The position numbers were made by a program, and so were the translations under genes. Below the pieces are notes generated by a model, which was given only the letters and a program-made list of their open reading frames with translations, was not told the DNA's origin and did not search any database. This document shows, one piece after another, positions 12,613-43,700 of a stretch of DNA of 64,000 bases (its first letter is position 1; each line of letters starts with the position of its first letter). The stretch lies in the NCBI GenBank assembly GCA_010909165.1, contig MU008163.1, positions 1,612,001-1,676,000 of the forward strand, written 5' to 3'. Source of the DNA: Anthoceros angustus. Its lineage: Eukaryota > Plantae > Anthocerotophyta.

Positions 12613-14779
12613 AGGGACCTTCGGCTCGCTTCTCTCATCAATCACTTGAGGTATTATTTGTTTACTGTGGGCTGGAGCCTGGAGGAGGCCTTGGGTTTGT
12701 GTGCGAGCTTCTAATGACTGTCTGCTGCGGGCTGCAGCACATGCACGAGAACCGGGTTCAGTTCGATGGGGTGTTTTGGAAGCCTGGCCTGGCCTCCGGC
12801 CTGCCCGGTGCCCGCCCACGAGAAGCTTGGCATGGGGGTGGACGAGAAATCTGCAGCTTTTGGAGGAGAAGATTCCAGCTTCCATGACCAGCTCGTGACA
12901 CCTAGTGCGAAAGCCAAGTGTGTCAATTCCGGTATTCCAGAGCCATCTCAACGGATGTGCCACCATTACCAGAGCATAAAGATAGTGGCTAATGAGCCAA
13001 GTCCCCGGGATGGAAAGCCGGATGGAACCAGTACTGCTCCCATCATGCCGGGCCGGCGCTGTGCCGAGGGCACATATCACTCCCGCAACAATCATCACCT
13101 TTCCCGGAAATCGGACTTCGGAACTCGGACGCACACAAGAGTGCTGGCCTGTGCTGCACTCATCATCGTCATCGTGTGTGTGTGTGAAGGAACCGAGCGA
13201 GTTGCGGATCTCATTGTGCACAAATTTGAGTCTGCAATTGTACAAACGCAGTCTGCACACCCCCAGCCTGAAGACGGGGGATTTGTTTGAGCACTGTAGA
13301 AATACAACCATGGAACAACTTCAAGCTTGAGATACGGCCAGCAACTCGAGGCCGTTGCTGTTTTTGGGGAGGCTAAGAATAGATTCTGGCTGCCGTCTCA
13401 GACATGTATGACACTTATTTGTCTGACGTAAGTTGCAGCGAGAAACGTTACCCATGTTTGTTTAACAGGTCGGGGGTAGATCCCGTCGTATTGGGGTGTT
13501 GGGGCCGAGGTGGGCCGGAGCTTGCCCTGCCCACCTCCCATCCTATGTACACTTTCTTCACCTCACATGGTGCCAAATTCTGTTTCGGACAAGAGGCACC
13601 ACAATGTCAAGTCCAAACACTACCTTGTCGGCTACAACGTTAGAGGCGAGGCTGCTAATGATATGGCAACAGAACAGAACATGCTTGCTCCAGTCCACAG
13701 ACAGTTGGGTATGTGCTTACTTACTGTAGCCAGGAGGTTCATGATGACCATGTGAGCATGTTAGACCTAAGGGATTCCAAGCATCCTGAACAGGGCTTGA
13801 CTGGATTCTGGTCCAGGAACGGCCCTTCTAATCCCCATGTCAGCAGTGACCCTTTCGATGGGCCATGCTCATCTTTTCGGACCGACTCTGTTCACAGGTT
13901 TCATGCTGCGTCAATCCTCACAGCACATGTTACACAGCGGAGGATCTGCGCATGGTTTCTGGGGTGGAAAAGCCGGGGACACCTGTCTTAGCAGAATATC
14001 AGTCGGGGATACCAGATCTTAGCAGTATACCAGTACTGCTTTAACGGATAACAGTCAACGTTCCACAATCAGTCTTCCATCTTCACGAACAATCTGGCCT
14101 CTCCTCTGATTACTCTAGACCAGTTACCGTGTCAAGAAAGTAGACGACTTGTTTCATGTCTCCAACATTTGGGAACAGGATTATGAAGGATCATTTCTGG
14201 ACTGGGATAGATGCACCACAACAAGTTTCATATGGTTGGTCTCATTCTTCTTTCAACATCCAAAGATCTGGACGTCACTCCACTGACAACCAGCCTCTGA
14301 AAAAGAGAGATCCAGTTTGTTGTTTGTTGTTTACCGCCAACTTGTGAACTGATACATGATCCTATGAGAATGAGCTGCTTTGTGTAGGGACTCAAGTATG
14401 CCAGAAAATGGCTTTCCGGAACCTTAGCTGCTTCTCTACTGTTCCAATTTCTGGCTTCAGGGCAACCAGAGTATCACGCAGGCGGGCACCTCCTGTGGTG
14501 GTCGGCCTCACAATCTTCGTTTGTCTCAGCAGGCCTAGCTGCATCTCTTGGTCCACTTGTGCACAATCTGGCTCTGCAGGTCTCTTGGTATTCTGAGGAG
14601 AGCCGTTCGTTATGCTCCTCAGTGTTCTCCCGTGATGACGTACACACTCAGGTACTATGTTCTTGGCTTAGCCGCTCCATAGTCTTCCCTTCTGTACCTC
14701 CCTCCCATTCTTGGCTCCTCATCGATGCTGGACAACAGAAAGGCCTCCATGGACGCCAACAGGACAACGTTCAAGTGCT

Positions 14780-16921
14780 GAATCCCACTAGCACAGTCCC
14801 AGTGCATGCCTTGCTCTCAATCTCTGCATGGAGCTTGCTTCCCAGATGCAAAGCTGCCAAATTTGCACATGAGTGCAGGAGGAACACAAATGTCTCGGAA
14901 TTGGGTACAGCGGTGCCTTCTTATCACATGACACTGTCGAGCAAAAGGGCTTCCTGGTCCATGCCCTGCTCGGAATACCCTGCGATTAAGGCAGTCCACG
15001 TCGCAACAACATCGTTTTCACCCACTCCGTCAAATACTCCCGGCGCACCCTCCAGGCTGCCAACACTTTGCATACATATGACCGAACTGTTGGCTATAAA
15101 CCAATCAGCCTCATGTCCCCCATCTCTGTCTTGCACATGAAGCTGCTTCCCTCTTACCAAACCTTGGATGCCCACATTTGTACATTTCTGAATGAGGCAC
15201 ACAAATGTCACACACAGTTGGGTACAGAGATGCCTTGTTCTTGCATGACATGGTAAAGACGAAGGGCTTCCTTCCTTCTGCCCTGCTGCGAATGCCCTAC
15301 AATTAGGACAGGCAATGTCACCAAGACCGTCCAACACTCTCTGAGCATCTTCCAAGCTGCCACACTTTTGGCTATACGCACATCAGTGTGACGTCCCTGC
15401 TCTCTAACTTGTGCATGAAGCTGCTTCCCCGTCTCCAAAGCCGGGGGTGCCTACACCTGCACATGCCTGCAGGAGGCACGCAATTGTCGCTGGATAGGGT
15501 GTAGTAACGCCCTCTTCTTGCATAGCGCTGTAGAGGCCAAGGGCTTCCAGGCTCATGCCCTGCTGGGAATACCATGAAATCATGGCATTCCACGTGACCA
15601 CATTGTCTCTATCAAGTCCATCAAACAATCCCTGAGCATCCTCCAGACTGCCACACTATGCTTATCAAGCTGCTGGCTACAAATGCATCAGCTCGATGTC
15701 ATAGTACTCTGAGTTTCGCATGAATCTAGTTTCCTGTCTCCAAAACTGGGGTTCCCATGCCTGCAGGGGGCAGATGAAAGTCACAGAATTGGGTCCTGTG
15801 GTGCCTAATGCTTGCATACCACTATAGAGATGAAGGGCTTCCTGTCCCATACCCTGCTGGGCATACCTTGCAATTAGAGAGGTCAATATCCCCACATCTT
15901 TGTGACCAAGTCCTTCAATCAGTTGCTCAGTATCCTGAACCCATGCAGCCACACTTCGCGTACATGCTTACCAAAGTGTTGATCACAGCTACATCAGCCT
16001 GATCTCCTTTTTCTCTGATTTGTGGATGAAGCTGCTTCCCCACCTCCAAATCTGGGTTACCTACACTCGCACATGCCTGTAGAGGGCACACAAATGTCAC
16101 AGAGTCGGGTGCAACCATGCCTTCTTCTTACATAGCTCTGTAGAGATGAAGGGCTTTCTGGTCCATGCCCTGCTGGGAATACCCTCCAAAAAGAGCAGTC
16201 CAAGTCACCAAATCCTTTTTATCAAGTCCGTCAAACCCACTGTGAGCATCCTCTAGGCTGCCACACTTTGCACACATGTCAACCAAACTGTTGGCTACAA
16301 CCACATCAGCTTGATGCCCATGTTAGCTAAACCACATCAGCTTGATGCTCTTGTCCATGTTTAAGATGGACGAGAAATGATAGAAGACAACATGAAGCAT
16401 CAGGTACAGCAACCATTGCAAACACATCCATCGCATCTTGCAAGAGCCTTCCATGTGAAGCATACATTCGCAAAATTGCACAGAAACGTATCTGACTGCA
16501 CCCCATACTCACCATCAAAGCATGGACTCTGCGACCTACAACAATATCCCCCTTCATCACACATTTTCCGGACAGCATGAAAGAAGATCTCAAAACAAAA
16601 CTCCACTCTATGTGCACCAGAACCCCCAAAGCCTCACACGGCCCTGTTCACATAGCCTGCCCACGATTTCCGCAGTCACCCCAGTTTCAAATCCTGCAGG
16701 CCTATCACGACGAGGGTCAGGATCTTCCAGCTGCTGGCTACGGCCCTGAGCTGGTGGCTTCCTGCAAGGGTGCTGCAGCTCGCAGCTTCCGTGTTTGCCG
16801 CCGGCTGGTTCCTGGAAGTCACAGTTACGTGGGTGGCAGCTCTTGAACAATTGCTTGTCAACTCACCAGGTTCTTTGGTCCGCCCTTGGCGTGACTCAAT
16901 CGCCACGCTCCAGGCAGCCAT
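14780..16921 (-). pseudogene. PLS-class pentatricopeptide repeat (PPR) pseudogene, cassette A
   Basis: Fragments such as [70 protein letters not shown] and NVVTWNAMISWYSQQGMSLEALGLY are split by frameshifts and stops. ATG at 16921 precedes a Ser/Arg/Ala-rich transit-like leader. No DYW domain was found. Confidence 0.9.
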
Positions 16922-19096
16922 GGCTCAGTGAAGCGTATGGAGAGCGTTTGGCGAGTGAGCAGGAAGAGTAAATAGCGCTCATTATAAATTGGAGCATTTT
17001 GATTTAATTTACAAGAGGTAACAAATCGGGCACCCATGAGGGTGTGCGCCGTCTGGTATGTTCAAATCTCTGGAGCTCACAAACGTTCTCTCGCCTGAGA
17101 GGACTCTCCTTGGGAATCTGTTTTTCGCGTCACTGGAACCCTACTACCACTTCGCAGACGCTTTCTTCCTCGCGCATTCTTGATCATGGCACGTCGCCGT
17201 CTCGACTTGCTGCTTAGGTCCCCTAATGGTTATTCATGCATTGGCGGCATAGCGATCGGAGTCTCAATGGTCTCATTGGTCTCATGGTTTCTGTACGAAA
17301 GGTACTGCGCGCGCACTGGAAGGACCGGATTATTGAACTATGCTCGCCGACTGTCAAAGCGTGACGGCGCAAATAGCAGGGATGACGGTCCGAGATGCAG
17401 TACACATTTTAAAGAGTGACTTCCGGATGTGTTTACTCTATACACATTAGGACAGTGTAGCTGCATCAGCGATCAGGCGCTCGGGGAACAACCACGTGAA
17501 TGTACGTCAATCAGTTGCTCAGTATCCTGAACCCATGCAGCCACACGACATGCTTACCAAAGTGTTGATCACAGCTACATCAGCCTGATCTCCTTTTTCT
17601 CTGATTTGTGGATGAAGCTGCTTCCCCACCTCCAAATCTGGGTTACCTACACTCGCACATGCCTGTAGAGGGCACACAAATGTCACAGAGTCGGGTGCAA
17701 CCATGCCTTCTTCTTACATAGCTCTGTAGAGATGAAGGGCTTTCTGGTCCATGCCCTGCTGGGAATACCCTCCAAAAAGAGCAGTCCAAGTCACCAAATC
17801 CTTTTTATCAAGTCCGTCAAACCCACTGTGAGCATCCTCTAGGCTGCCACACTTTGCACACATGTCAACCAAACTGTTGGCTACAACCACATCAGCTTGA
17901 TGCCCATGTTAGCTAAACCACATCAGCTTGATGCTCTTGTCCATGTTTAAGATGGACGAGAAATGATAGAAGACAACATGAAGCATCAGGTACAGCAACC
18001 ATTGCAAACACATCCATCGCATCTTGCAAGAGCCTTCCATGTGAAGCATACATTCGCAAAATTGCACAGAAACGTATCTGACTCGCACCCCATACTCACC
18101 ATCAAAGCATGGACTCTGCGACCTACAACAATATCCCCCTTCATCACACATTTTCCGGACAGCATGAAAGAAGATCTCAAAACAAAACTCCACTCTATGT
18201 GCACCAGAACCCCCAAAGCCTCACACGGCCCTGTTCACATAGCCTGCCCACGATTTCCGCAGTCACCCCAGTTTCAAATCCTGCAGGCCTATCACGACGA
18301 GGGTCAGGATCTTCCAGCTGCTGGCTACGGCCCTGAGCTGGTGGCTTCCTGCAAGGGTGCTGCAGCTCGCAGCTTCCGTGTTTGCCGCCGGCTGGTTCCT
18401 GGAAGTCACAGTTACGTGGGTGGCAGCTCTTGAACAATTGCTTGTCAACTCACCAGGTTCTTTGGTCCGCCCTTGGCGTGACTCAATCGCCACGCTCCAG
18501 GCAGCCATGGCTCAGTGAAGCGTATGGAGAGCGTTTGGCGAGTGAGCAGGAAGAGTAAATAGCGCTCATTATAAATTGGAGCATTTTGATTTAATTTACA
18601 AGAGGTAACAAATCGGGCACCCATGAGGGTGTGCGCCGTCTGGTATGTTCAAATCTCTGGAGCTCACAAACGTTCTCTCGCCTGAGAGGACTCTCCTTGG
18701 GAATCTGTTTTTCGCGTCACTGGAACCCTACTACCACTTCGCAGACGCTTTCTTCCTCGCGCATTCTTGATCATGGCACGTCGCCGTCTCGACTTGCTGC
18801 TTAGGTCCCCTAATGGTTATTCATGCATTGGCGGCATAGCGATCGGAGTCTCAATGGTCTCATTGGTCTCATGGTTTCTGTACGAAAGGTACTGCGCGCG
18901 CACTGGAAGGACCGGATTATTGAACTATGCTCGCCGACTGTCAAAGCGTGACGGCGCAAATAGCAGGGATGACGGTCCGAGATGCAGTACACATTTTAAA
19001 GAGTGACTTCCGGATGTGTTTACTCTATACACATTAGGACAGTGTAGCTGCATCAGCGATCAGGCGCTCGGGGAACAACCACGTGAATGTACGTCA
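15915..19096. repeat. Near-perfect tandem duplication of about 1.59 kb (15915-17506 / 17507-19096) spanning the PPR 5' half, the shared promoter and the 5' part of the orphan gene
   Basis: ORF-track pairs are offset by 1586-1587 bp. The junction at 17501-17520 (tgtacg-tca-atcagttgctc) shows tca microhomology. Confidence 0.92.
16922..17185. promoter_or_regulatory. Divergent intergenic region of about 265 bp between PPR (-) and orphan X (+), with a conserved TATA-like core
   Basis: The motif cattataaattgg(a/g)g...tttaatt(t)aca is conserved at about 16980, 18567, 29360 (variant ttcataaattggggaa) and 33487, followed by a conserved aaatcgg..cccatgagg block. Confidence 0.6.
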
Positions 19097-19433
19097 CACC
19101 AGCTTGTGGCTCTCCGGCACGAACTCCTATGTAACAGCTGCGTTCCGGAGCAAGGAAGCGGATCTCGATAAGCACGTCTTCAGCTTTTCGTTTAGAGAGT
19201 GGGATTGCCGTCTTCGACTTTGTAAGCTGTCATCCATCCTCAGCTTCTCGACTTCAGTCCTCTTGTCGTCTGGCCGATTGATGCCTTGCTTCGAAGGGGA
19301 AAAGATAACCGCATTCTTTCATTGCAAGTGCGAGTCGATCCTATTCATAATTGACGTGTGTTTGGTGATTGGGATGAGATACCAGAGCTGTATAATGTGC
19401 GGATTCTTGTCAAGCAATGTGAGGGCGGGGTAA
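18773..19433 (+). pseudogene. Orphan gene X, copy A (frameshifted; a partial duplicate lies at 17186-17509)
   Basis: MARRRLDLLLR plus a hydrophobic stretch, then a premature stop at 19006. Downstream cagcttgtggctctccgg and tttcgtttagagag...cgactttgtaagc align with copies B and C. Confidence 0.75.
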
Positions 19434-19671
19434 CATTGTGCACTTATTCTTTGCCACATAATTGCAAGATTTGGATTCAAGATCGCATAATATTATCATC
19501 CTGAGCTGAGCGCCGTCCCACCTAGTCAGCCTGGCCCTTACAAGAGCTCTTGCTTACAGCGTCCTATTTCACACTGTATCCTCATCTAAAATGTTTTCGA
19601 AGTCGACAGGCCATGAGCCAAAGTGTGTCCCGTGGTTCTGTAAGCTTATATTGGTGATCACCTTTTGGTTA

Positions 19672-19882
19672 CACTGTTAAATATGAGTTGAATACACTGT
19701 TAAATATGAATTGAATATACTGTTAACTATTAAATGTGAGTTGAATACACTGTTAAATGTGAGTTGAATATACTGTTAAATGTGAGTTGAATACACTGTT
19801 AAATGTGAGTTGAATATACTCTTAAATGTGAGTTGAATACACTGTTAAATGTGAGTTGAATATACCGTTAAATGTGAGTTGA
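19672..19882. repeat. 23-bp minisatellite (actgttaaatgtgagttgaatac), about 9 copies
   Basis: Head-to-tail repeats with alternating ...aatac/...aatat variants. Confidence 0.92.
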
Positions 19883-20058
19883 ACAAGCTCAATGTACATG
19901 CAGGGTGATGCTTGCGAGAGGCACCAATTTTCTCGTAGTTCAACCACATAGGACTCTGCAACGTAGATCAAGAGGAGTTTCCGGACTTGGATGTGAGGAC
20001 TTTCTGGCGTGTTAGGGCTTTTGGACTTGTTTCTAGTTCTATATCAGAACCTCGTTAT

Positions 20059-20395
20059 AATTCTTCAAACCAATATATATAACTTTTATTAGTTTTTTTA
20101 CTTTCTTCCTATCCGAGATATACATACTATGTCGTCAATCATTAATCATTAATTCTTCAAACCTATATATATAACAGTCATAATCTTTCTCACTTTTCTA
20201 TCTAGGATATACATACTATATAGTCTTAACTAGGAATAACTTTCATTATCTTTTTTACTTGCTTCCTATTCGAGATATACATACTATGTCGTTAATCATT
20301 AATCATTAATTCTTCAAACCTACATATATAACGGTCATAATCTTTCTCACTTTCTTACTATCTGGGATATACATACTATATAGTCTTAACTAGGA
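20059..20395. repeat. Two copies of an AT-rich unit of about 175 bp
   Basis: cgagatatacatactatgtcgt(c/t)aatcattaatcattaattcttcaaacct...tagtcttaactagga occurs twice. Confidence 0.85.
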
Positions 20396-20594
20396 AGAGG
20401 CTAACCTGGTATATTGTCTAAATATTTCGATGCGGTAGCGACCAAATTCCAAGATTGATAGTTTCCTCGGACTGCCGGTGCCCAATGTGAAAACTCCTAT
20501 GTTGCTTAAGCCGAGAGCAAATGTTTGTAAACTCAAAGTAAACTCAAAGACAAACAACGATGTTATGGGGTGCTATGTTTGAAGTCTGCGTCAC

Positions 20595-20800: not shown

Positions 20801-21059
20801 CACCTGGCAAAAATCGATCATATCAGCACTCACAGCCTTGCTGATTGTCTCAACTCGTGATAATGTAGCTTTGACTTCAATGATCAGCATATAAAATTTC
20901 GAACATAGACTAAAAATATTAGATTATTATATCAAAATATAAAATATTAAAAACAAAACTTGTTAGAGGTCATAATATTTTCAGGATGGATAATAAGTTT
21001 TAAATAACATGGAATATAGATCTTTAATATTAGATGATAATAATGATAATAAATGATTA

Positions 21060-22305
21060 GATGATAATACCCCGCATCATTGCGGTCTACGTTACCTCGT
21101 TTTTTGACAAGACCATCAAACAAACTGACACACTTGGCATACATGTTCACCAAACTGCTGGCTACAAACACTTCGACTTGAAATTTTCGCTGTTTAATCT
21201 GTGGATGGACCTGCTTCCCCTGCTCTAAAGCTGAGGTGCTCACTCTTGCACATGGCTGCAAGGCACACAAATGTCACGGAATGGGGTTCACCAACAACCT
21301 CCTTGCATAGCACTGTAGAGATGAGAGGCTTCCTGCCCCATGCCCTGCTTGGATATCCGGCATCATGGCAGCCCGCGTCACCTCATTCTTTTCACCAAGT
21401 CCATCAAATGCTCTCCGGGCATCTTCAAAGCTTCCACACTTCGTATACATGTTCTCAAAACTGCTCCATAGAAAAGCATCAGCTTGACAGTCTCGTATTT
21501 AAGCCTGCGTATGAAGGTGCTTCCCCTTCTCCAGTGCCACCCAGCCCAATGATTGCAGGAGGCACACAAATGTCACATAATCAGGTACAGCAATGCCTTC
21601 TCCTTGCATGGCACAGTAAAGACAAAAAGTTTCCTTCCCCATACCCTGCTCAGAAAATCCTGGTATCATAGCATTCCATGGTCACCACATCTTTGTTCCC
21701 AAGTCCATCAAACACTCTTTACGCATTTCCAAGCTGCCACGCTTTCCATAAATGTTGACCAAGCTGTTGGTACAAACAAATCAGGTCTCTATTTCCCGCA
21801 TGCCGATCCTTCCCCCCTCTTCAATGCCGGAGTGCCCACACCTGCACATTCACTGTAGAGCGGGAGGGTTTCGTGCCCCATGCCCTGATGGGAATATCCT
21901 GCTATCATCGCATTCCACGTCACCACGTCCTTAGGATCAAGTCCGTTCATGGGTCACTCTAGGGGTTACCACTCAAACACGTTCCTCGGGGATGCCTGTG
22001 CAGCAGAACAGGATGCTCTTCTCACTTTACATTGTTTCCCGCCCAAGTGCCGGCTCCAGAAATATTTCTTCACTGCAACTTCTCCAAGCCAGAAGATCCG
22101 CATCTAGCCAGACATCCTCTTCCTCGTGGACGGGCTGGCTTCTACCAAAGTGCTCTCTCCCGACTTGGCTGTACGTCAGAAGGCGCTTCGTTGAATTCAG
22201 GCCAGCGGAAGCTCTTCCCAGCATACCCGTCAGCCCTCCAGCCATGGTTCCCGGACCCATCCGTTCAGCAGTCCCCAACAGATGGTAAGACAGCCTGCAG
22301 GTCAC
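21060..22305 (-). pseudogene. Second PLS-PPR pseudogene (downstream PPR module of cassette A)
   Basis: LEQGKQVHPQIK...EVFVASSLVNMYAKC, WNAMIPGFSEQGMGKE and PDYVTFVCLLQ fragments with many disruptions. Its 5' portion is homologous to 30850-31350. Confidence 0.85.
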
Positions 22306-22364
22306 TAAAAAATGTTAAGATTGGGAATTGTAGCACGCTTTCACAATTGAGCTGTCTAGCTTCC

Positions 22365-22490
22365 AAACGGACATTGACCCCAAAGCTCTCAAGCTTCTCA
22401 AACAGACATCGTTCCCCAAGCTCTCAAGCTTCTCAAACAGACATTATTGTGCCCCAAACTCTCTACCATCTGAAACAGACATTATGCCGC
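22365..22490. repeat. Repeats of about 37 bp (ccccaagctctcaagcttctcaaacagacat...), with a homologous array at about 31327-31450
   Basis: 3-4 degenerate copies at both loci. The flanks 22330-23350 and 31330-32140 are homologous. Confidence 0.8.
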
Positions 22491-24245
22491 AGGTTCTCTC
22501 CTTTTTTCGACATTGTGTGGAGGAAAAACACATGGTTTCTTAATGAGTTTCTTGTTGGCTTAAGTCGGGCAAACTCAGCTAGTTGCCATGTTAGAGATAA
22601 GGTGAAGGTCTGTTTCATAACGAGATTGAGGAGGGAAGTGGTTCTGAACTTCAGAGCCCCTTCCCCCTTCCTTCAGCGTCTCAAGGAGAGTCGAGTGAAG
22701 TGAGCTGTTTGCTGGAGACGGCAACTTTGACACTCTGAAAAGGCCCTCTGCCTTTCGTGTAAGTGATTAGGTACTCGGGTGGATGGGCACAAGCATAGGA
22801 AGTGTCCAGGAAGGCACGGCGGAATGAGACCCCTTCCAGATGGTCCTGGTCTTCCAGATGTTTGGAGACTTGGGCTGCATTGCAGAAAGAAAGGGTGGAA
22901 AGACTGCAGTTCTACAAGAAAAGCTGTCCTTTGCGTGTGGTAGTCCTCACAGCAACCATGAAAGACACAGTATCATCAGCTTTAGTTCCCAAGAGAAGGA
23001 AGGGGTAGCGGCTGATGGTGGAGATAAGTGAAAGCAGCTGGTAAGAACTGATGATTGGTTCGTTTCGGTGCACCTAATCGATCTTCCTGCCTTTTATGGA
23101 CATCATAAGTAAGCTGCCTGGCACATGGAGACTCTATCTTGCCCAGCACTCTGGCACGCACCGACCAAAAAGTCAAACCACTTTCCGCCCAGCTGCTAGT
23201 GCGTACCTTCTGAACTACTGTCATGCTCAAAACTCCATCCAGGCCACAAGACCAGCCTTGTTCAGCCAGGCTTGACAGTGTGGTTGGTGGCAGGTGCAAG
23301 CCTTTCCCTAGCTGCCCAGGCCCAGCTGGGCTCATTCGTGTGCTACATAACTTACAAGGATAGTTTGCTTCCATGAGAAGCCAGATGCTACCTGAAACGA
23401 GTGCCCCTGGTAAAGGTATAGTCACCTACAGTCATGAAGAATCGATCTATATGTAAGTGCCCAGGGGACTGCCCAGGGGCCAGCATCAGAGATTCACACT
23501 CTCATAAAGTGAGGTATACGACAGGACCACGCAACTCATGCAGGTAGCAGTACATCATACAGGATCCACAGGCGATCCCATGCTTCATGGTGCCCCCGAA
23601 ACACGTGCAAACAAGACCTGCCCTAGAAGAAGGTTCGGCAACTTTCTCTGCCCACTTCCAGTAAACCCATCAGGCTCGAAAGCCCAGAGCCATCTTTAGA
23701 CTACCAACAGTTGAGTCGTTTAGTCCCTCTCTGACCTCCGAGTGCGCAGCCCGCAGTTCAAGAAGTTGGCGTCCACTTCATGAAAATCAGCACAAGCTGT
23801 GGTCCACGACTCCACACCCCACAGTCCTGGGCTGCTCTTGTCATACGCTGACTCCAAAATATCGACAGTGTACAGCGGCTCCGTCGCCCACGCCGACTCT
23901 GGCAGCTTCCCCAGCTGCAATCCCTGTTAGGTTTTTAAGCTCAGGTAGACGATGTCAACCCAGGTACAGTAACGGCCCCATCAATCCCCAAGACTTCAGA
24001 AGCTCTCAACAGTCATCACAGCCTGGCTATCTCACGAGTCATGTGACTCATATCAACGCAAGGGTGTCCGCCTCATGCAATGCCATCCAGTCTGGATACA
24101 TCCCATTCTATCCCATCCCATCCCAACCAGCATGCATGAATGCAGTCACGTCCCAGCCTCGATTAAACCACATACCCTAAGTTTGGTATGATGTCCTGTG
24201 CCCCAACCCCACAGGACTCCAGGAGCACGTGATGGACAGTAAGTA

Positions 24246-30849: not shown

Positions 30850-31354
30850 CATTTGCCGTGTCGATTGTCGCATCTTCCAAGCTGCCACACGTTTGCAAGC
30901 TCCTGGTTACAAACACATCAGGTCTCTAGTTTCCGCATGCAGGTGCTCCCTCCCTCCCCGCCCCCCGTTCAATGCCGGAGTGCCCACACCTGCGCATTCA
31001 CTGTAAAGCGGGAGGGCTTCCTGCCCCATGCCCTGCTGGGAATATCCTGCTATCATCGCATTCCACGTCACCACTTCCTTAAGATCAAGTCCATTCACGG
31101 GTCACTCTCACGTTCCTCGGGGATGCCTGTGCAGCAGAACAGGATGCTCTTCTCACTTTACCTCTTGTCCCACCCACGTGCAGCCTCCAGATATATTTCT
31201 TCTCCACAACTTCTCCTTGCAGAAGATCCGCATTCAGCCAGACATCCTCTTCCTCTTGGACGGGCTGGCTTCTGCCAAAGTGCTCCCTCCCGACTTGGCT
31301 GTGCGCCAGCAGGCACTTCCTTGATGAAACAGACATTGTGCCCCAAGCTCTCAA
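30850..31354 (-). pseudogene. Truncated PLS-PPR remnant (downstream module of cassette B)
   Basis: LDLKEVVTWNAMIAGYSQQGMGQEALPLYSECAGVG; homologous to about 21780-22230. Confidence 0.85.
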
Positions 31355-33691: not shown

Positions 33692-34256
33692 ATGGCACGT
33701 CCTCGTCTCTACTACTTGCTGCGTAGGCCTTGAACTGTGTATGCATTTCTTGGTAGCGTAGTGATCGCACTGGTTTTAGTGATTATTTCGAAAGCTATGA
33801 CGCGCACACTGCAAGGATCGGATCAGAGGATCATGAGGGTCCGGACAAAGCCCGCGGACTATCAATGCCTGCTTTCGCCGGACTATCAACGCCTGATTTC
33901 GCTCCAAGATCCAAGTCCCAGTCGGTTCAGGCTTTTTATGCTCTTGGGATTTGTGGAATCGTATCTGAAAGAGGCGATCAGGGAAAGGAGGTTCAACGAA
34001 ACCGAGCAGTGGCAGGCATATGTGGATGTTTTCGACAGGCTTGTTGCTCTCCGCTCCGAAATTCCATTTATCGGCTGCGTTCTGGAGGAAGCTGACCCGA
34101 GTGAGATCGGTAAGAACGCCTTTCACGTTTCGTTTAGATCGTCGGCTTGCTGTCGACTTTGTAAGCTTTCATCCATCCTCAACCTCTCGACTTCAGTCTT
34201 TTTGTCGTCCGGCTAATTGATGGCTTGCTTCCTATTGGAAAAGACAACCGCATTCT
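33692..34256 (+). pseudogene. Orphan gene X, copy C (premature TGA at codon 14; 3' part resumes at about 40725 after the Copia insertion)
   Basis: Codon-for-codon homologous to copy B; CGA>TGA at 33731-33733; accgc-attct|LTR...LTR|attct-ttcattgcaag. Confidence 0.85.
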
Positions 34257-34521
34257 TGTTAGAGATTCAATCCTCTGCTACTTACTCTAGTATATTAGGA
34301 TATATTAGGATATTGCACTATCGAGTCTAGGGCTTACCTCCTCGATAGTTGCCTAGCCTAAGGGCTATATATATATGTAGCACCCTGTGCACCATATTGA
34401 CGTGTACTGTGGAGCCTATCTAAGCTAGTGGTGCTATTGCGTGCCATCCATTGCCTCCTTGTGTCCGCTAACCGTGTTGATCCGCGGCGCTGCCCTGGTT
34501 GTGTCTGAGCTAGTTCTTTCA
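34257..34521 (+). repeat. Copia LTR 1 (265 bp)
   Basis: tgttagagattcaatcc ... gagctagttctttca, followed by the PBS. Confidence 0.92.
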
Positions 34522-37433
34522 TGGTATCAGAGCGGGAACACTAATCGCGAGACTTGATAAGAGAGGACGGAGTTGTGATGGCGATGGGCTCAGTAACCAC
34601 CGCGGCCTTGAGGACGCGGGTGTTTGATGGAACGGAGTTCCATGTATGGAAAAGGTCCATGAAGGTTCTGCTGATGGCAGAGGACGCGTATGGCATTGCC
34701 GAGGGCAAAGAGCCGAAACCCGAAGATGAGGGAAGAGAGCAGAAAGAATGGATGCAGAGAGACCACAAGGGTACAGCTCTCCTATATATGAATCTCTACG
34801 GCAAATCAAGGTTGAGAACCGCATAAGGGCACGGAGTACATTTGGAATCTTCTCAATGAGAAATATGGCCAGAAGGGAGCAGGTGAAGTATTTCACTCGT
34901 TTTGTCGTGTGACGACATTGAAGTATTCAGACGAAGACGATTTGCGAAAGCACATCGACACCTTTCACGAACTGTTTACAGCGCTAGCATTAGCTAACGA
35001 GCGCTTTGCTATCCAGGAGGACATACAAAAGATGTTTCTATATCGTCTATGCCCAAGCTTGGTCGTGGTTCATAGATTTCCTAATAGCCCAAGACACTCT
35101 CACATGGGAGGAGGTCACCTCTAAGATGTTGGCGAAGGAGACTCGCCATTGGACGCAATGGCGGATCTTCAACAGTCCGAGCATGCGATGTTCATCAAGG
35201 GGAAGGGACGGAACAACCGGAACAAGGACAAGCAGGGGGAGTCCTCGCAGGGACAGAAGGACAAGAGAATAGTGAAGAGGGGACAGTGCCGGAAATGCTT
35301 CAAGTATGGTCATTATGAGAAGGATTGCAAGGATCGGAAGACCGCACATCTCACGGAGGGTGAGAGTGAAGGTGAGGTTGCGGAGGCAACGCTCACAGAA
35401 GAAGTATCGCACGCGTGCTACAGTACACAAGCGAAACGATACCTGACGATAGATTCTGCATGTACATCCTTTATGGTGAAGGATAAGGAGCCCTTCAAGA
35501 CTACGGGAGGGAGAAGATGCGCCTCTAGGGAACGATAGCGAGATAGGCGCCGAGGGTGTGGGGAGTACAGCTCGATTGCTCGACGAGGTCAAGGCAATGG
35601 AAGGAGCGCGCTTTTGTACCGACCTACGAAATCTCATGTCGTGGCACCATTGACCGATGCAGGTCTGCAGGTCCTTTTTACGAAGAAGGAAGTTTTGTTT
35701 CTGAAGAATGGTCAGATGCACGGCGATGTGGTGGCAAAAGGCCACCGTACAGGGAACTTGTACCAGATGGAGGTTCCTGACGACCAAGAGGTTCTGACAG
35801 TGTCGGAGAAAGGTGGAAATGCCTTACTGTGGCATAGACGGTTTGGGCATACCAACTTGAAGTTTCTCCTGGAGATGGAGCGGAAGAAGCTCGTGACAGG
35901 CATGGAGCTCCAGAAGGCAGAACTTGGTCTGTGTGACGCTTGTATGAAAGGCAAGCATCCCCGAAGGTCTTATGTTTCACCACAAGAGAGCAAAGAAGTC
36001 TTGGAACTTGTCCACTCGATCTTTGGACCAATGCAAGTGGAAGCAAGGATGATACAAAGTAGATACTATATTTCGCTTATCGACGACTACATAGGAGAAT
36101 ACGTGTACTTCTGGAAGAAGAGTGACGCCTCAAGCATTTCGGATGTTCGTAATCATGGAGAAACAAACAGGAAAGAAGTTGAAGAAACTTCGAACTGATG
36201 GGGAGGAGAGTATTTGAGTAAACTCTTCAAGGATGAATGCACAGCGGCCGGAATTGAGAGGCAGTTGATGACAAGGTACACGCCGCAACAGGCAGGGATC
36301 GCCGAGCGGAAGAATCGTACCATCTGCAATGGCGCTAGGAGTATGCTAGCGGAAAGTAGGATGCCAAAATATTTTGGGCGTATGCAGGGCAGCATACACG
36401 ATGTAATATGTCAATTACCATGGCGCTAGGTGGCTCTATGACACCCCATGAAGCTTGGTTTGGTGAGAAACCAAATGTCTCACACTTGAGAGTGTTTGGT
36501 CACAGAGCATATGCGCATGTTCCTAAGCAACCGCGAAGAAGTTGGACGATGTAAGCATGTGCGCTTCATTGGTTATGCGAATGAGCGAAAGGCTTACATT
36601 GTGGGATCCCGCCAGCGTATGCATGAAAGTTCGATGTCGTGTTCGATGAGAACAATATTGAAGTCATGCGAGAGCACTCGCTACGGCATCAACTCGAGTT
36701 TATCCAGACACCTTCCTTGTCCCAAATCCACCAATGACAGCAGAAGAGGATCACCACACACCGGAGGGTGATGGTGAGGACATCCCAGCAGGTGAGGTCA
36801 TACCACCTATTGTTCCCGCAGGAATTCTCGGAGGAGGAAATTCAAAAGGAGCACAACAGCAGCAGCATGTTGAGGAGTTAGTTCCAGCATTGGAGGATGC
36901 AGAGGACGAACCAACAGCAGCTATTCCGAGACGGTCGACAAGGGTTCGACAGCCTTCGCGGAAGGTCCTCGAGAATGCCCAGCTCAACATGGTGAGCGGA
37001 CCAGAATGGTGTTTTCTTCTCGAAGATGATATCCCGCTCACAATTGAGGAAGCACGAAACGGACCTGAAGGTGAGTTCTGGAATGAAGCTATTCGTACTG
37101 AGTATAATTCGATGCTCGAAAACAACGCTTGACGTTGGTTGATTTGCCACCCGGAGAAAAGTCCGACGCAAGTGGACTTTCAAGAAGAAGTACAATGCCG
37201 ACGGATCTGAAAGGCATAAAGGCGAGACTAGTGGCTCGGTTTCACTCAAGTGAAAGGGCTGGACTACGAGGAGACCTTCTCCCGTAGTTCGCATGAATAG
37301 ATCTCAAAGGCGTGATTCGGATCTCATACCTCCGCACCGAGGAGATGGTGGCGGATATCTTCACCAAGGCGCCGGCGCAAAGTTTACATTTTCGTTCGGA
37401 TCTTGGCGTAAGTAGCTTTAGCTTGAAGGGGAG

Positions 37434-37706
37434 TGTTAGAGATTCAATCCTCGCTACTTACTCTAGTATATTAGGATATATTAGGATATTGCACTATCGA
37501 GTCTAGGGCTTACCTCCTCGATAGTTGCCTAGCCTAAGGGCTATATATATATGTAGCACCCTGTGCACCATATTGACGTGTACTGTGGAGCCTATCTAAG
37601 CTAGTGGTGCTATTGCGTGTGCTATCCATTGCCTCTCCTTGTGTCTGCTAACTGTGTTGATCCTGTGCGTTGCCCAGACTGTGTTGTGTCTGAGCTAGTT
37701 CTTTCA
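37434..37706 (+). repeat. Copia LTR 2 (shared middle LTR, 273 bp)
   Basis: Preceded by the PPT and followed by a PBS. Confidence 0.92.
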
Positions 37707-40463
37707 TGGTATAAGAGCGGGAACACTAATCGCGAGACTTGATAAGAGAGGACGGAGTTGTGATGGCGATGGGCTCAGTAACCACCGCGGCCTTGAGGAG
37801 GCGGGTGTTTGATGGAGCGGAGTTCCATGTATGGAAAAGGTCCATGAAGGTTCGATGGCGGAGGGGAGCGTATGGCATTGCAGGGCAAAGAGCCGAAACT
37901 CAAGATGAGGGAGAGAGCAGAGAGAATGGATGCGGAGAGACCACAAGTCTGACTCTCCTATATATGAATCTCTCGGTCCAGTGAAGGTCGGAGAACCGCA
38001 TAAGGGCACGAGTACATTTTGGAATCTTCTCAATGAGAAATATGGCGAAGGGGCGGTGAAGTATTTCACTTGTTTTGTCGTGTGACATTGAAGTATTCGA
38101 CGAGACGATTTGCGAAAGCACATCGACACCTTTCACGAACTGTTTACAGCGCTAGCATTAGCTAACGAGCGCTTTGCTATCCAGGAGGACATACAAAAGA
38201 TGTTTCTATATGAATCTATGCCCGAAGCTTGGTCAGGGTTCATAGATTTCCTAATAGCCCAAGACACTCTCACATGGGAGGAGGTCACCTCTAAGATGTT
38301 GGCGAAGGAGACTTGATTGGGCAATGGCGGGATCTTCAACAGTCCGGAGCATGCGATGTTCATTAAGGGAAGGGACGGAACAACCGGAACAAGGACAAGC
38401 GGGGGAGTCCTCGAGGAAGGACAAGAGAATAGTGAAGAGGGGCGGTCGGGAAATGCTTCAAGTATGGTCATTATGAAGGATTGCAAGGATCGGAAGACCG
38501 CATCTCACGGAGGGTGAGTGAAGGTGAGGTTGCGGAGGCAGCCTCGCGAAGAAGTACCAGCGTGCTATAGTACCTGAGCGATAGATTACGCATGTACATC
38601 CTTTATGGTGAAGGATAAGGAGCTCCTTCAAGACTACGGAGGGAAGGCAGTGCGCCTAGGGAAGCGATAGCGAGATAGGCGTCGAGGGTGTGGGGGAGTC
38701 TGCTCAGTTGCTCGGCGGCGAGGTCAAGGCAATGGAAGGCATGTACGCACCTCATTAGAAATCTCATGTCGTGGCACCATTGACCGTCTGGTCTGCGGGT
38801 CCTCTTACGAAGAAGGAAGTTTTGTTTCAAGAATGGTCGGATGCGCGATGTGGTGGCGAAGGCCACCGTCTGGAACTTGTACCGGATGGAGGTTCCTAAC
38901 AAGAGGTTACGGCGTCGGAGAAAGGTGGAAATGCCTTCTGTGGCATGACGGTTTGGGCATACCAACTTGAAGTTTCTCCACGGAGATGGAGAAGCTCGTG
39001 GCAGCATGGAGCTCAGGCGAGCTTGTTGCATGTGGCTTGTATGAAAGGCAAGCATCCCGAAGGTCTTATGTTTCATCACGAGAGAGCAAAGAAGTCTTGG
39101 AACTTGTCCACTCGATCTTTGCGGACCAATGCAAGTGGAAGCAAGGATGATACAAAGTAGATACTATATTTCGTTTATCGGACTATGGGAGAAACGGTGT
39201 ACTTCTGCGGAAGAAGAGGCTCTCAAGCATTTCGGATGTTCGAGCGTGCGGAGAAACAAACAGAAAGAAGTTGAAGAAACTTGATGGGGGAGAGTATTTG
39301 AGTAAACTCTTCAAGGATGAATGCACGCCGGAATTGAGAGGCGATTGACGACAAGGTACACGCCCATAGCAGGAGGATCGTGCGGAAGAATCGTACCATC
39401 TGCAATGGCGCTAGGAGTATGCTAGCGGAAGTAGGATGCCAAAATAGGGGCGTGGCGGTACGTCTGAGAATATGTCAATTACCATAGGTGGCTCTATGAC
39501 ACCCCATGAAGCTTGGTTTGGTGAGAAACCAAATGTCTCACACTTGAGAGTGTTTGGTGCGTAGCATATGCATGTTCCTAAGCAACCGCGGAAGAAGTTG
39601 GACGACGAAGCATCAAGTGCGGCTTCATTGGTTATGCGAATGAGCGAAAAGGCTTCTGATTGTGGGATCCGTCGCAGCGGATGCATGAAAGTTACGATGT
39701 CGTGTTCGATGAGAACAATATTGGAAGTCATCACGGAAACACGGTATTTACGGACCTCAACTGAGTTTATCCAGACACCTTGTCCCGGATCCACCAATGA
39801 CAAGAGGATCACCACAGGAGGGTGATGGTGAGGACATCAGCGGTGAGGTCATACCACCTATTGTTCCCAGGAATTCTCGGAGGAAATTCGGAAGAACTGA
39901 AGACATGTTGAGGAGTTAGTTCCGGCATTGGAGGATGCGGAGGGCGAACCAAGCAGCTATTCCGAGACGGTCGACAAGGGTTCGACCTTCGGAAGGTCCT
40001 CGAGAATGCCGACTCAACATGGTGGCGGACGAATGGTGTTTTCTTCTCGAAGATGATATCCGCTCACAATTGAGGAAGCACGAAAGCGGACACGAAGGTG
40101 AGTTACGGAATGAAGCTATTCGTCGAGTATAATTCGATGCTCGAAAACAACGTTTGGGCGTTGGTTGATTTGCCACCGGAGAAAAGCCGTCATTGCAAGT
40201 GGACTTTCAAGAAGAAGTACAATCTTGACGGATCTGGAAAGGCATAAGGCGAGACTAGTGGCTCGGTTTCACTCAAGTGAAAGGGCTGGACTACGAGGAG
40301 ACCTTCTCCCCGGTAGTTCGCATGAATAAATCTCAAAGGCGTGATTCAGATCTCATACCTCCGCACCGAGGAGATGGTGGCGGATATCTTCACCAAGGCG
40401 CTCGGCGCAAAGTTTACATTTTCGTTCGGATCTTGGCGTAAGTAGCTTTAGCTTGAAGGGGAG

Positions 40464-40724
40464 TGTTAGAGATTCAATCCTCGCTACTTACTCTAGTATA
40501 TTAGGATATATTAGGATATTGCACTATCGAGTCTAGGGCTTACCTCCTCGATAGTTGCCTAGCCTAAGGAGCTATATATGTAGCACCATGTGCACCATAT
40601 TGACGTGTCTTGTGGAGCCTATCTAAGCCGGTGGTGCTATTGCGTGTGCCATCCATTGCCTCGCGTATCTCTAGCGTGTTGATCCTGCACGTTGCCACGT
40701 GTTGTGTCTGAGCTAGTTCTTACA
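40464..40724 (+). repeat. Copia LTR 3 (261 bp)
   Basis: Preceded by the PPT, ends ...ttcttaca, then the TSD attct. Confidence 0.92.
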
Positions 40725-43700
40725 ATTCTTTCATTGCAAGTGCGAGTCGATCATATCCATGTTGATTGATGTGCAAGCCTAGGGTACCGTGCTGCATGAT
40801 GTTCGGATTCTTGTCAAGCATATACAGGGCAGCAATGTGAAGTAGGGGTAACATTCTGCACTTATTCTTTGCCACAAAAGTTCAAGATTCAATAATATTA
40901 TCATCCTGAGCTAAGCGATTTCGAAGAACTCTGCCTTGCAGCATCCTATTTCACATGTCTGGACTCATCTGGAACGTTTATGAATTTTGTGGACTAGCTG
41001 CAGTGAGCCAAACTCTGACGTGTGTCACGGTTTCGTCCTGTAACCCTATCTTGCTGAGGATCCTTTCAAGATTACAAGCGAGAACTGTCTAACTTGAACT
41101 GAACATTCTCATTGTACACGCCGGGTGACGCAATTGCAAGAGGCACAAATGGCCGTGTCTTCAAACCTGTGAAAGCTTAACTACACAGACGACTCTACAT
41201 CGTCGATCCTGAGGAGTTTGAACGTATGAGGTTTTCTAACGTGTTAGGGATTTCGCACTTGGTTTTAGGTGTACCCGATAGAGGACTTTGACGTGTTTCG
41301 ATGCTGACGAGAGTAAACCACAAATCTGTCCCGAGTGTTTTAATTGTCCACCGACATATGTAACATTGACGATCTTTCTCACTTTCTTACACTAGCGGGA
41401 TGTACATGGCTAGTGTTCACCAGGAAGCGGCTGTTCCCTTGCGTGTTGGCCGGGTTTTCTGGCAGCTGTCACGGAGGCAAAAATTTGCCGTGTCGATTGT
41501 CTCGGCTCCTGACAGACAGCCCAGGCTTCAAATGATCAGCATGCAAGAAATCGTTATCTGAAAAACAAAACCAAAATCGTATCTGTTAATGAGTAGTTAC
41601 TTCACATTGGGCGCGGAAGGCCCCTCGGTTGCTTCATTTGTTTTGGACTCAGGCCTTCGGACTAGCTCACCTCTTGAGGCGTACATCTATGATTTAAGGC
41701 TTCTTTGATGCACTTGCTGGCGAAGAGACTGGACATGGATGGTGTTGAAGAGTAGATGTCCGCGTTGAAAGTAATTTGACCTGGGGTCCTGAACTTTGCA
41801 AATTGCGGATGCGCTGTGAGATGGCTTCATGATCGCTGTAGGTTTTACGTACGAGTTCAATCGAGGTTAATGATCTTGCAATGCAGAATATCATCAGATG
41901 TTAGCCTTCAAGAGATTTTCGTCTATGGGGAAACCGTTTGATGCCTTTTGCATTTTAGGTCAATTGATCGTACAGATCAAAACTATTCGGATTTAGCCCG
42001 AAGGGTCTCGACGACTGCTACTAGTAATAGGAGGACGGGAACTCGGAGATGATAGTGATCAATCAACATTTCTTCATATTTTGAAATACATCTCACAGCC
42101 AATTACCGTTAGCTTGAATATGAACGTTAGACTTTGCAATCTTACCAGGAGTTCACATCTATATCTATAGGCGTTTGCACTTGGCAAGTTGGGCCTGCTA
42201 AATTCTTCGAGGTGGAGACTAGGATCCTGTTATATTTATTCGAGGCTCACTAATCACTCATGAGCCATGGAATCGCCTAACCGATCATGCGGGTGCACAA
42301 ATCTATGTGACGGCTACTTGGAGGATGCCAGATTCCTGCACTAGTAGTACTGTGGAAGCTTGGAAGCAGGCTGTGACCGGCCAGCAACCTGTTTCCAGAC
42401 ATGGAGGCAATATTTATGTCAGTTGCTTGCTATTAACCTTGCAACCGCATGTTGCAACATAATATTCCCTTTTCAAATTGCAGTGTCATATATCGATCCA
42501 GGCTAGGGCAGAGTTCTGCGTGGCCGAAGTACACAGTGGATGTGCAATTAGTGTGGACTTGCAGATATTGAGGGGAACAATTCAGAAGGAGCCGACAACG
42601 ACCGACGGCTCAGCTATTGAAGGAAACAGTGGTAGTGATACCAGCACGGACCCAGGGTACCTTGGATCACCGCTTTACATAGCTACACCTGTACATGTAC
42701 AGTCACAAGCAGCCTAACCAGAAGTGTGCCTATTCCACTGAGTCCCAGCTTTGGGTCCGCTGCAGGATCCGGAGTGGGCCTGTCACAGGGAGGCAAACCA
42801 TGAGAGCGCCTATAAGACGGAGCGAAACCCTTTGCTGGGGTGCCAAGAAACCCAGGAGTGGGCCTGTCCCACGGATGCCGACTGTCATACGGAGCGCAAT
42901 CCATAGCCCTGTCACACGGAGCCATACTAGAAGATGCAGGGAGCAAGCATGGATCGATTCTCCTTCAAGCAGCAAGCCTAAGAGAACCCAGCCTAGTCAT
43001 ATCACGGGTGATCGGCCGCAGTCTCCCTTACGAGGAACCGCCATCATCGTTCCCGATAATAGAGGATTGGATGCATTTCTTCCTCCTGGGGCAGTGGGGA
43101 CGCACACTGTCGTTTCCCACAACCAAGAGCCCTCGGCATCTCGCCCTGCTGAGACCCATAGGCAGAACACTGTCATTCCCGAGCCCCAGAATGCGGAGCG
43201 AGGGGCAATGCCAATCATGACAGTTTCTCTGGAACACCTGCTGACATTACCTCCCAAGAATGTTTGGGTACTCAGTCACGGTGCGAAAGAAAACAAATCA
43301 TGCTTATTCGACATCTATATTCGAGAGCATAAAAACAAATTGTACTAAAACTGTAGAAACTTTTAGGCCGACTCACGGGATATGGTATTCGACATATCCT
43401 CACTAGTCTAGATACTTGACATAGCTATTCGACATATCACTTTTGTCGGAATTGAGCGTGCCAGCCGGAACGTTTGGAATGTTTCTATGTCGGTATTTTC
43501 TGGTTCTGTCTGGTAGCGCTGTAGATGCAAACACTGTCTTGGGATGTCAACCTCGATTCAAGTGTTAACTTGTAAGGAGGAATGGCTGCATCGCATGCTT
43601 CTCTTGGTGCTCCAAAAATTGGAGTGGTCTGTCCCCTGATTTTGTGAAGTGACAAAATGAAGTGAAATCCAAAACCTTGGTCAGTGCATTAGTTCAGATC

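What the first reader, a model, noticed from the sequence alone, without database searches (positions are those of the whole stretch)
14400..41530. Amplified PPR / orphan-membrane-protein cassette undergoing birth and death
A multi-kb module recurs three times: [PLS-PPR (-)] <- ~265-bp divergent promoter with conserved TATA -> [orphan X (+)] + conserved downstream block + [second PPR (-)] + shared repeat block. Copy A spans about 14.4-23.4 kb, copy B 28.0-32.1 kb, and copy C 33.1-41.5 kb; C keeps the promoter and X but has lost the PPR body and its ATG. ATG-to-ATG spacing is conserved (16921/17186 and 29291/29557). Every PPR is disrupted and only X copy B has an open frame. Established: clustered, rapidly turning-over PPR genes are typical of cytonuclear-conflict loci (restorer-of-fertility-like) and of RNA-editing factor expansions. 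Inference: X and the PPR may be a co-regulated two-gene unit, or X may be the selected passenger that drove amplification.
Basis: partly seen in the sequence, partly recalled or inferred. Interest (0 to 1): 0.78.

Follow-up and report, generated by a model that had tools for sequence, protein, structure and literature searches.

The report
Decaying PPR gene array, unproven ORF
This stretch of a seedless-plant genome is a repeatedly duplicated and now completely dead cluster of organelle RNA-editing-type (PPR) genes, and the small "orphan gene X" beside them is an unproven reading frame in the spacer between two PPR genes; this is ordinary for such a genome.

Summary
The repeat structure is real, but it is not a clean threefold cassette. 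The full module (PPR1, spacer with X, PPR2, upstream block) occurs twice, in A and B. Only the 1.6-kb spacer unit carrying the TATA-like core and ORF X recurs, and it does so four times. Copy C spans 8 kb only because a three-LTR copia retrotransposon (34257-40724, target-site duplication ATTCT) sits in its X unit.

All PPR stretches are multiply frameshifted pseudogenes. A 581-bp piece of A1 also lies in an intron of the neighbouring peroxidase gene.

X has no Pfam family and no relative among 1.84 billion representative proteins or in metagenomes. Every copy is damaged differently, and the "intact" B copy has a frameshifted tail. B and C show no purifying selection (dN/dS about 2).

There are hints that X once coded. 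Its ORF is longer than chance (P=0.002), and its start and membrane helix are conserved. Synonymous changes are also fewer than expected (P=0.002). These hints do not show a working gene, a two-gene unit or a driver of amplification.

The restorer-of-fertility analogy fails, because these are PLS-class PPRs, not P-class. Earlier notes of this scan report similar dead PPR arrays elsewhere in this genome. Interest is low.

The parts
14400..16921 (-). PPR1 pseudogene, copy A1. PLS-type repeats at 14774-16322, N-terminal region up to ATG 16921, and a decayed tail that may be DYW.
   Evidence: Twelve PPR-like ORF pieces lie in three frames. Pfam PPR hits. Relative to B it has an 80-nt insertion after the ATG, a 13-nt deletion and an in-frame TAA. 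The tail was read by eye only and has no Pfam DYW hit.
15915..19096 (.). Very recent tandem duplication: 15915-17509 and 17507-19096. It doubles the PPR1 5' half, the promoter and the X 5' part.
   Evidence: 1589 aligned nt, 99.9% identical. Both copies share the same lesions.
17186..17419 (+). X copy A1: 77 codons followed by a stop, then cut at 17509 by the duplication boundary.
18773..19433 (+). X copy A2: 77 codons then a stop. The X-homologous DNA continues in another frame (ORF 19083-19433).
   Evidence: Indels relative to B/C are not multiples of three (+10, -15, +2, -5).
19434..20470 (.). Remainder of the A spacer unit, including a ~158-bp tandem repeat at 20079-20396.
20950..21953 (-). 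PPR2 pseudogene, copy A.
   Evidence: Pfam PPR hit on 21792-21953.
21722..23367 (.). Upstream block of PPR2 in copy A, shared with B.
   Evidence: 86-88% identical to 30869-32174. ORFs in it have no Pfam hit.
26043..26623 (-). Stray PPR1 fragment inside an intron of peroxidase gene 1.
   Evidence: 98.3% identical to A1 15862-16445. Peroxidase exons mapped at 25889-26017 and 26767-27330.
28095..29291 (-). PPR1 pseudogene, copy B, truncated at its 3' end.
   Evidence: several deletions and frameshifts. Weak Pfam PPR hit.
29292..29556 (.). 265-bp region between the PPR1 start and the X start in copy B. Its conserved TATA-like core lies at 29362-29407.
29557..30177 (+). X copy B: 206-codon open frame with a predicted N-terminal membrane helix (residues about 14-41). 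A 1-nt deletion near codon 178 shifts its tail out of the ancestral frame.
   Evidence: No family or relative found.
30178..30869 (.). Remainder of the B spacer unit.
   Evidence: 88.7% identical to C 40730-41501.
30910..31101 (-). PPR2 stub in copy B (about one PPR motif).
   Evidence: Pfam PPR hit.
30869..32174 (.). Upstream block of PPR2 in copy B.
33128..33366 (.). Tail of a further, mostly lost spacer unit just before C.
   Evidence: Matches 41233-41531 and B 30763-30869.
33421..34256 (+). Copy C, left part: promoter plus X (ATG at 33692). It has TGA stops at codon 14 and near codon 172.
34257..40724 (+). Ty1/copia-type LTR retrotransposon with three LTRs (34257-34521, 37434-37706, 40464-40724) and two truncated internal regions. 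It is inserted in the 3' end of X copy C.
   Evidence: TG..CA termini, 5-bp duplication ATTCT (34252-34256 and 40725-40729), and TGGTATCAGAGC directly after LTR1 (TGGTATAAGAGC after LTR2). Gag-pre-integrase domain at E=1.5e-11 and weak copia gag. LTR1-LTR3 K=0.10.
40730..41531 (.). Copy C, right part: remainder of the spacer unit.

Best explanation
This is a local array of same-strand (minus) PLS-class PPR genes that has decayed. The ancestral unit was PPR2, then a 1.6-kb spacer, then PPR1.

The unit was copied repeatedly by non-allelic or unequal recombination and by small segmental duplications, as follows:
- The whole unit was duplicated, giving A and B.
- The spacer alone was duplicated in tandem, giving C and the tail in front of it.
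- A 1.59-kb piece inside A was duplicated very recently.
- A 581-bp piece was copied into a neighbouring intron.
- A copia retrotransposon then inserted into C.

All PPR copies are pseudogenes. The conserved 265-bp region is most simply the PPR1 promoter and 5' leader: the TATA-like core lies about 70-115 bp upstream of the PPR1 ATG. 'X' is an open frame on the opposite strand of that spacer. It is not shown to be a gene, is broken differently in every copy, and was carried along passively.

Shown here: the repeat anatomy, the lesions, the retrotransposon, and the lack of relatives and of constraint for X. Inferred: the recombination mechanism, the promoter assignment, and the passive status of X.
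For: Repeat map.

PPR identity and breakage.

Assembly quality: neighbouring genes keep long clean exons. The GT17 exon aligns over 98% of its length to homologues and the peroxidase 2 ORF is 338 aa. The PPR lesions are therefore not assembly noise.

Graded ages of the duplications:
- spacer A vs B/C: 69% identical
- PPR and block, A vs B: 84-88%
- spacer B vs C: 85-89%
- LTRs: K=0.03-0.10
- intron fragment: 98.3%
- A1/A2: 99.9%

A1-B PPR substitutions are flat over codon positions, 14/23/18. This indicates neutral decay since that split.

X:
- no Pfam family
- 0 hits by word search
- 0 hits by HMMER against 1.84 billion representatives
- none in metagenome contigs
- Atlas recognition 1717, below the 2300 that 91 in 100 proteins of known families reach
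- dN/dS 2.07 between B and C
- non-triplet indels between A and B/C, and a 1-nt shift in B's tail
- two stops plus the retrotransposon in C
- mean pLDDT 46

No terminal inverted repeats occur at the unit ends.
Against: The X frame carries signals not expected of random spacer DNA:
- The 206-codon ORF is longer than in 99.8% of dinucleotide shuffles of the unit.
- The ATG, its context and a hydrophobic helix are kept in all four copies. The first two A-versus-B/C indels are in frame, 3 and 6 nt.
- GC by codon position is 0.53/0.42/0.54.
- B-C substitutions avoid third positions (27/31/12). Only 9 synonymous changes are seen where 19 are expected (base-matched permutation, P=0.002).

The lack of relatives is a weak argument. 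A conserved gene of this window finds nothing above 59% identity, so this lineage is absent from the protein libraries.
Confidence: 0.74

Rival explanations
1. X is, or recently was, a real lineage-specific gene for a small single-pass membrane protein. It would be transcribed divergently from the PPR1 promoter region and evolve fast under diversifying selection. B would be the last usable copy.
For: ORF length P=0.002. Start codon, 5' region and hydrophobic helix are conserved in all copies. Early indels are in frame. GC phase pattern fits coding. Synonymous changes are fewer than expected (P=0.002) and dN/dS is 2.07.
Against: Three of four copies are broken, and B's tail is frameshifted relative to A and C. 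dN about equals the divergence of the flanking non-coding DNA, so the ratio is high mainly because dS is low. Only one pair could be compared, and the ORF was picked for this very oddity. No relatives were found. Fold confidence is low outside the helix. Conservation in the 3' island continues past B's stop codon and ignores the frame.
Confidence: 0.17
2. X, as a selected passenger, or the X-PPR pair, as a co-regulated unit, drove the amplification.
For: X and PPR1 stay head-to-head at 265-266 bp in A1, A2 and B. The X unit alone was duplicated in C.
Against: The recent duplications (A1/A2 and the intron fragment) copy DNA that was already broken, and their breakpoints cut through X and PPR1. 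No PPR copy is intact. A-B identity is lowest in X.
Confidence: 0.04
3. Part of the structure is an assembly artefact: a falsely expanded repeat or a collapsed haplotig.
For: The A1/A2 copies are 99.9% identical over 1.59 kb. Such a repeat could be mis-expanded.
Against: The other copies differ by 2-31% and carry different indels, a retrotransposon with a target-site duplication, and different flanks. These cannot be allelic or artefactual.
Confidence: 0.05
4. The 1.6-kb X unit is a mobile element that inserts next to PPR genes.
For: The unit recurs with similar ends (B 29288 and 30869) in B, C and the tail before C.
Against: There are no terminal inverted repeats, no target-site duplications and no transposase-like ORF. 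The ends are not sharp in the alignment. All copies lie within 25 kb and are collinear with the PPR array.
Confidence: 0.04

Closest known systems
Lineage-specific expansions of PLS-class (E/DYW) PPR RNA-editing-factor genes in hornworts, lycophytes and ferns (PMC7027989; PMC13386178)
   Same: PLS-type repeats, local duplication, a very PPR-rich genome with about 50% GC, and copies flanked by LTR elements.
   Different: No copy here is intact. The published counts concern annotated genes, and dispersed duplication is reported as the main mode. This locus is a tandem or proximal array of pseudogenes.
Restorer-of-fertility-like (RFL) PPR clusters of angiosperms
   Same: Clustered PPR genes with rapid turnover and pseudogenes.
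   Different: RFL genes are P-class, mitochondrial, found in angiosperms, and show diversifying selection at RNA-contact residues. Here the repeats are PLS-type, substitutions look neutral, and the best match of a conserved neighbouring gene is only 59% to any vascular plant.
Head-to-head (bidirectional-promoter) gene pairs
   Same: Two start codons 265-266 bp apart on opposite strands, with a conserved TATA-like core between them.
   Different: One partner is a pseudogene in every copy and the other is an unsupported ORF. No transcription data are available.
Ty1/copia LTR retrotransposons with three LTRs (tandem or recombinant elements)
   Same: TG..CA LTRs, a 5-bp target duplication, a primer-binding site next to the LTR, a polypurine tract, and gag and gag-pre-integrase domains.
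   Different: The internal regions are only about 2.8-2.9 kb, and no reverse transcriptase was found among the ORFs tested. The element is old (K about 0.1).

Membership tests
PLS-class PPR gene | PPR motifs recognisable by profile (PF01535/PF13041) | tested here: met
   (best E=6e-10). Self-profile search maps 42 pieces, all on the minus strand.
PLS-class PPR gene | P-L-S triplet organisation (about 103 aa, or about 309 bp, period) | tested here: met
   Internal DNA repeats are spaced 294-316 bp (family D2). The motif wording in the ORFs fits. The motif definitions come from my own knowledge.
PLS-class PPR gene | C-terminal E/DYW deaminase-like domain | tested here: inconclusive
   The tail at 14400-14770 shows faint DYW-like wording by eye. 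The two ORF pieces tested gave no Pfam hit.
PLS-class PPR gene | Uninterrupted reading frame (working gene) | tested here: not met
   There are multiple frameshifts, stops and deletions in every copy.
Restorer-of-fertility-like PPR cluster | P-class arrays (35-aa motifs only) | tested here: not met
   Triplet period and L/S-type motifs are present.
Restorer-of-fertility-like PPR cluster | Diversifying selection between paralogues | tested here: not met
   A1 vs B differences by codon position are 14/23/18, i.e. flat.
Bidirectional two-gene unit | Two functional genes head-to-head within 1 kb | tested here: not met
   The spacing of 265-266 bp is met, but the PPR is dead in all copies and X is unsupported.
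Bidirectional two-gene unit | Transcription in both directions from the shared region | not testable with these tools
Orphan / de novo protein-coding gene (X) | ORF longer than chance | tested here: met
   206 codons; P=0.002 in 3000 dinucleotide shuffles of the unit.
Orphan / de novo protein-coding gene (X) | No relatives outside the lineage | tested here: met
   Caveat: the lineage itself is not in the libraries.
Orphan / de novo protein-coding gene (X) | Selection on the encoded protein, with the frame kept between copies | tested here: not met
   dN/dS is 2.07. Indels are not multiples of three, and stops differ between copies. The shortage of synonymous changes is unexplained.
Ty1/copia LTR retrotransposon | LTRs with TG..CA ends, a 5-bp target duplication, and PBS and PPT next to the LTRs | tested here: met
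Ty1/copia LTR retrotransposon | Copia-type gag and gag-pre-integrase domains | tested here: met
   PF13976 at E=1.5e-11. PF14223 is weak, E=1.3e-4.
Ty1/copia LTR retrotransposon | Reverse transcriptase / RNase H (autonomous element) | tested here: inconclusive
   None was found among the ORFs of 90 aa or more that were tested. The internal regions are too short for a full pol.

The most novel reading that the evidence does not exclude
X is a young, lineage-specific gene for a single-pass membrane protein, born in the spacer of a PPR array. It would share PPR1's promoter region divergently and evolve under diversifying selection (dN/dS about 2, third codon positions spared). Copy B would still be functional.
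Probability: 0.07. Interest if true: 0.55.

Novelty: new member of a known kind. Interest (0 to 1): 0.2.

Why it matters
Mostly this is a clean-up. The locus should be annotated as PPR pseudogenes plus a copia element, not as a novel two-gene cassette.

It gives a well-resolved local example of how PPR arrays turn over in a PPR-rich seedless plant: whole-unit duplication, spacer-only duplication, duplication of dead fragments into a neighbour's intron, and retrotransposon invasion.

The one open thread is the X frame, whose substitution pattern is odd. If expression data showed it to be translated, it would be a candidate young gene arising from the spacer of a gene array.

Tried and rejected
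- Antisense or shifted coding frames as an explanation of X's substitution pattern. The antisense frame whose positions would give a normal purifying pattern has about nine stops, several shared by B and C. The other sense frames give dN/dS of 0.67-0.8 and have many stops.
- A CpG-decay explanation. The third-position deficit persists at non-CpG sites, 20/19/9.
- A non-coding RNA in the conserved core. Rfam at gathering score finds only a tRNA and U1 in the window.
- A transposon reading of the X unit. No inverted repeats were found.
- More copies elsewhere. Scan notes by sequence returned nothing. The protein scan and the core-motif scan of metagenome contigs found nothing.
- The structure prediction of X was uninformative, so no fold search was run.
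- The third big protein search was not spent on the PPR pieces. Their family is not in doubt, and the length window would exclude full-length PPRs.
- Broken PPRs were searched as separate stop-free pieces only.
Full report
**Setting.** The window is gene-dense land-plant nuclear DNA with about 50% GC. It holds:
- an NRT1/PTR-like gene
- two inverted class III peroxidase paralogues (exons at about 25.3-27.7 kb on the plus strand and 44.4-46.1 kb on the minus strand)
- a U1 snRNA
- pyruvate kinase
- a GT17 glycosyltransferase
- a PWWP-domain gene

The GT17 exon finds nothing better than 59% identity; its best matches are a lycophyte and then many angiosperms. The species and its close kin are therefore absent from the protein libraries. 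Earlier notes of this scan call the genome hornwort-like. I did not test that.

**Repeat anatomy.** Self-comparison and a self-trained PPR profile give the following map. All PPR remnants lie on the minus strand, so the array reads PPR2, then spacer, then PPR1.

| Copy | Elements, in plus-strand order |
|---|---|
| A | PPR1 14400-16921; 265-bp gap; X from 17186; tandem duplication 15915-17509 = 17507-19096; spacer to about 20470; PPR2 20950-21953; block 21722-23367 |
| B | PPR1 28095-29291 (3' truncated); gap; X 29557-30177; spacer to 30869; PPR2 stub 30910-31101; block to 32174; then tRNA-Ala(CGC) 32231-32305 |
| C | tail of a lost unit 33128-33366; spacer unit 33421-34256 and 40730-41531, split by a retroelement |

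The whole module therefore exists twice. The 1.6-kb spacer unit that carries the conserved core and X exists four times, plus one tail.

**The retroelement in C.** It has three 261-273-bp LTRs with TG..CA ends, each internal region preceded by a primer-binding site (TGGTATCAGAGC, then TGGTATAAGAGC) and followed by a purine tract. The 5-bp duplication ATTCT flanks it, and the site is empty in B and A. It carries a gag-pre-integrase domain (E=1.5e-11) and weak copia gag signals. No reverse transcriptase was found among the ORFs tested. LTR1-LTR3 and the two internal regions differ by K of about 0.10.

**The PPR copies.** Pfam recognises PPR motifs in the pieces. The internal repeat period of 294-316 bp fits P-L-S triplets. 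Every copy is split over three frames by stops, frameshifts and deletions.

In the A1-B alignment the lesions are mostly private. A1 has an 80-nt insertion just after the ATG, a 13-nt deletion and an in-frame TAA. B has several deletions and 1-nt shifts.

Over 360 aligned coding positions, A1-B differences are flat across codon positions at 14/23/18. There is thus no trace of purifying or diversifying selection since that split.

A1 and A2 share their lesions and are 99.9% identical. A 581-bp piece that is 98.3% identical to A1 lies in intron 3 of peroxidase 1. The recent events therefore copied dead DNA. Neighbouring genes have long clean exons, so the lesions are not assembly noise.

**Mosaic ages.** A and B are 84% identical in PPR1 and 86-88% in the block, but only 69% in the gap, X and spacer. 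B and C are 85-89% identical throughout. Since the PPR stretch looks neutral too, the difference is one of history, not of constraint. It points to gene conversion or unequal crossing-over among array members, which joined PPR and spacer segments of different ages.

**The 265-bp region.** The TATAAAT-containing core and the stretch around the X start are the best-conserved parts across A, B and C. The core occurs only at the four units. It lies about 70-115 bp upstream of the PPR1 ATG and about 150-195 bp upstream of the X ATG. Its simplest role is as the PPR1 promoter. Direction of transcription cannot be read from sequence.

**Evidence against X as a working gene:**
- It has no Pfam family.
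- It has no hit in the word-indexed search.
- It has no hit at E<=0.001 among 1.84 billion representatives, and none in metagenome contigs.
- Its Atlas recognition score is low.
- AlphaFold gives mean pLDDT 46, with only the N-terminal helix confident.
- A1 and A2 stop at codon 78 and differ from B/C by indels that are not multiples of three.
- C has two CGA-to-TGA stops and the retroelement.
- B has a 1-nt deletion relative to both A and C, so its last 30 or so codons are out of the ancestral frame.
- The conserved 3' island ignores the frame and runs past B's stop.
- dN/dS between B and C is 2.07 (9.5 synonymous and 59.5 non-synonymous changes).
- dN (0.18) is about the divergence of the flanks, and dS (0.085) is below it.

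**Evidence that the frame means, or once meant, something:**
- The ORF length has P=0.002 against shuffles.
- The ATG is conserved, and a hydrophobic helix is present in all copies.
- The early indels are in frame.
- GC by codon position is 0.53/0.42/0.54.
- Substitutions avoid third positions (27/31/12), and this also holds at non-CpG sites.
- A base-matched permutation gives P=0.002 for so few synonymous changes, while stops appear at the neutral rate.

Other frames and the antisense strand do not explain this pattern.

This rests on one pair of sequences, with clustered changes, and on an ORF that was singled out for this very feature. I treat it as unexplained, not as proof of selection.

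**Verdict.** This is a dead, repeatedly rearranged PLS-PPR array with a nested copia element. It is ordinary for a genome with thousands of PPR genes (PMC7027989; PMC13386178), and earlier notes of this scan describe similar arrays elsewhere in the same genome. The restorer-of-fertility analogy fails on motif class. The two-gene-unit and passenger-driver ideas are unsupported. X remains an unproven ORF, with a small chance of being a young gene.

**Limits.** No expression data and no access to the rest of the genome were available.

Noticed in passing
window 32231-32305 (-) and 25773-25853 (-): An intact tRNA-Ala(CGC) gene sits just beyond the B block. An 85%-identical, degenerate tRNA-Ala-like copy, not called by ARAGORN or Rfam, lies in intron 2 of peroxidase gene 1. 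An earlier scan note reports a tRNA gene travelling with another PPR array in this genome.
   Followed up: partly
window 25344-27696 (+) and 44389-46072 (-): Two class III peroxidase paralogues lie in inverted orientation (about 70% protein identity, 75% DNA) and bracket the B and C copies. Copy 1 has introns holding the tRNA-like and PPR fragments. It ends in a proline- and leucine-rich low-complexity tail that copy 2 lacks.
   Followed up: partly
window 29557-30090: B-C substitutions in the X frame spare third codon positions (27/31/12). In the middle part the counts are 15/24/4. The deficit is also seen at non-CpG sites and is not explained by any other frame.
   Followed up: yes
window 46257-46416 (-): A full-length U1 snRNA gene (122 bits) lies next to the 5' end of peroxidase 2.
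   Followed up: no
window 1-2413: A tandem duplication of about 1.2 kb at 90.6% identity (1-1145 and 1239-2413) lies beside an NRT1/PTR-like gene.
   Followed up: no
window 10055-10556 and 20079-20396: Short tandem arrays: units of about 110 bp at 10.0-10.6 kb, and a 158-bp unit repeated twice (92% identical) inside the A spacer.
   Followed up: no
window 50000-56000: An AT-rich island (33-38% GC) holds the GT17 gene, whose third-position GC is 0.29, against 0.85-0.91 in the peroxidases 5-25 kb away. This is a strong local contrast in codon composition.
   Followed up: no
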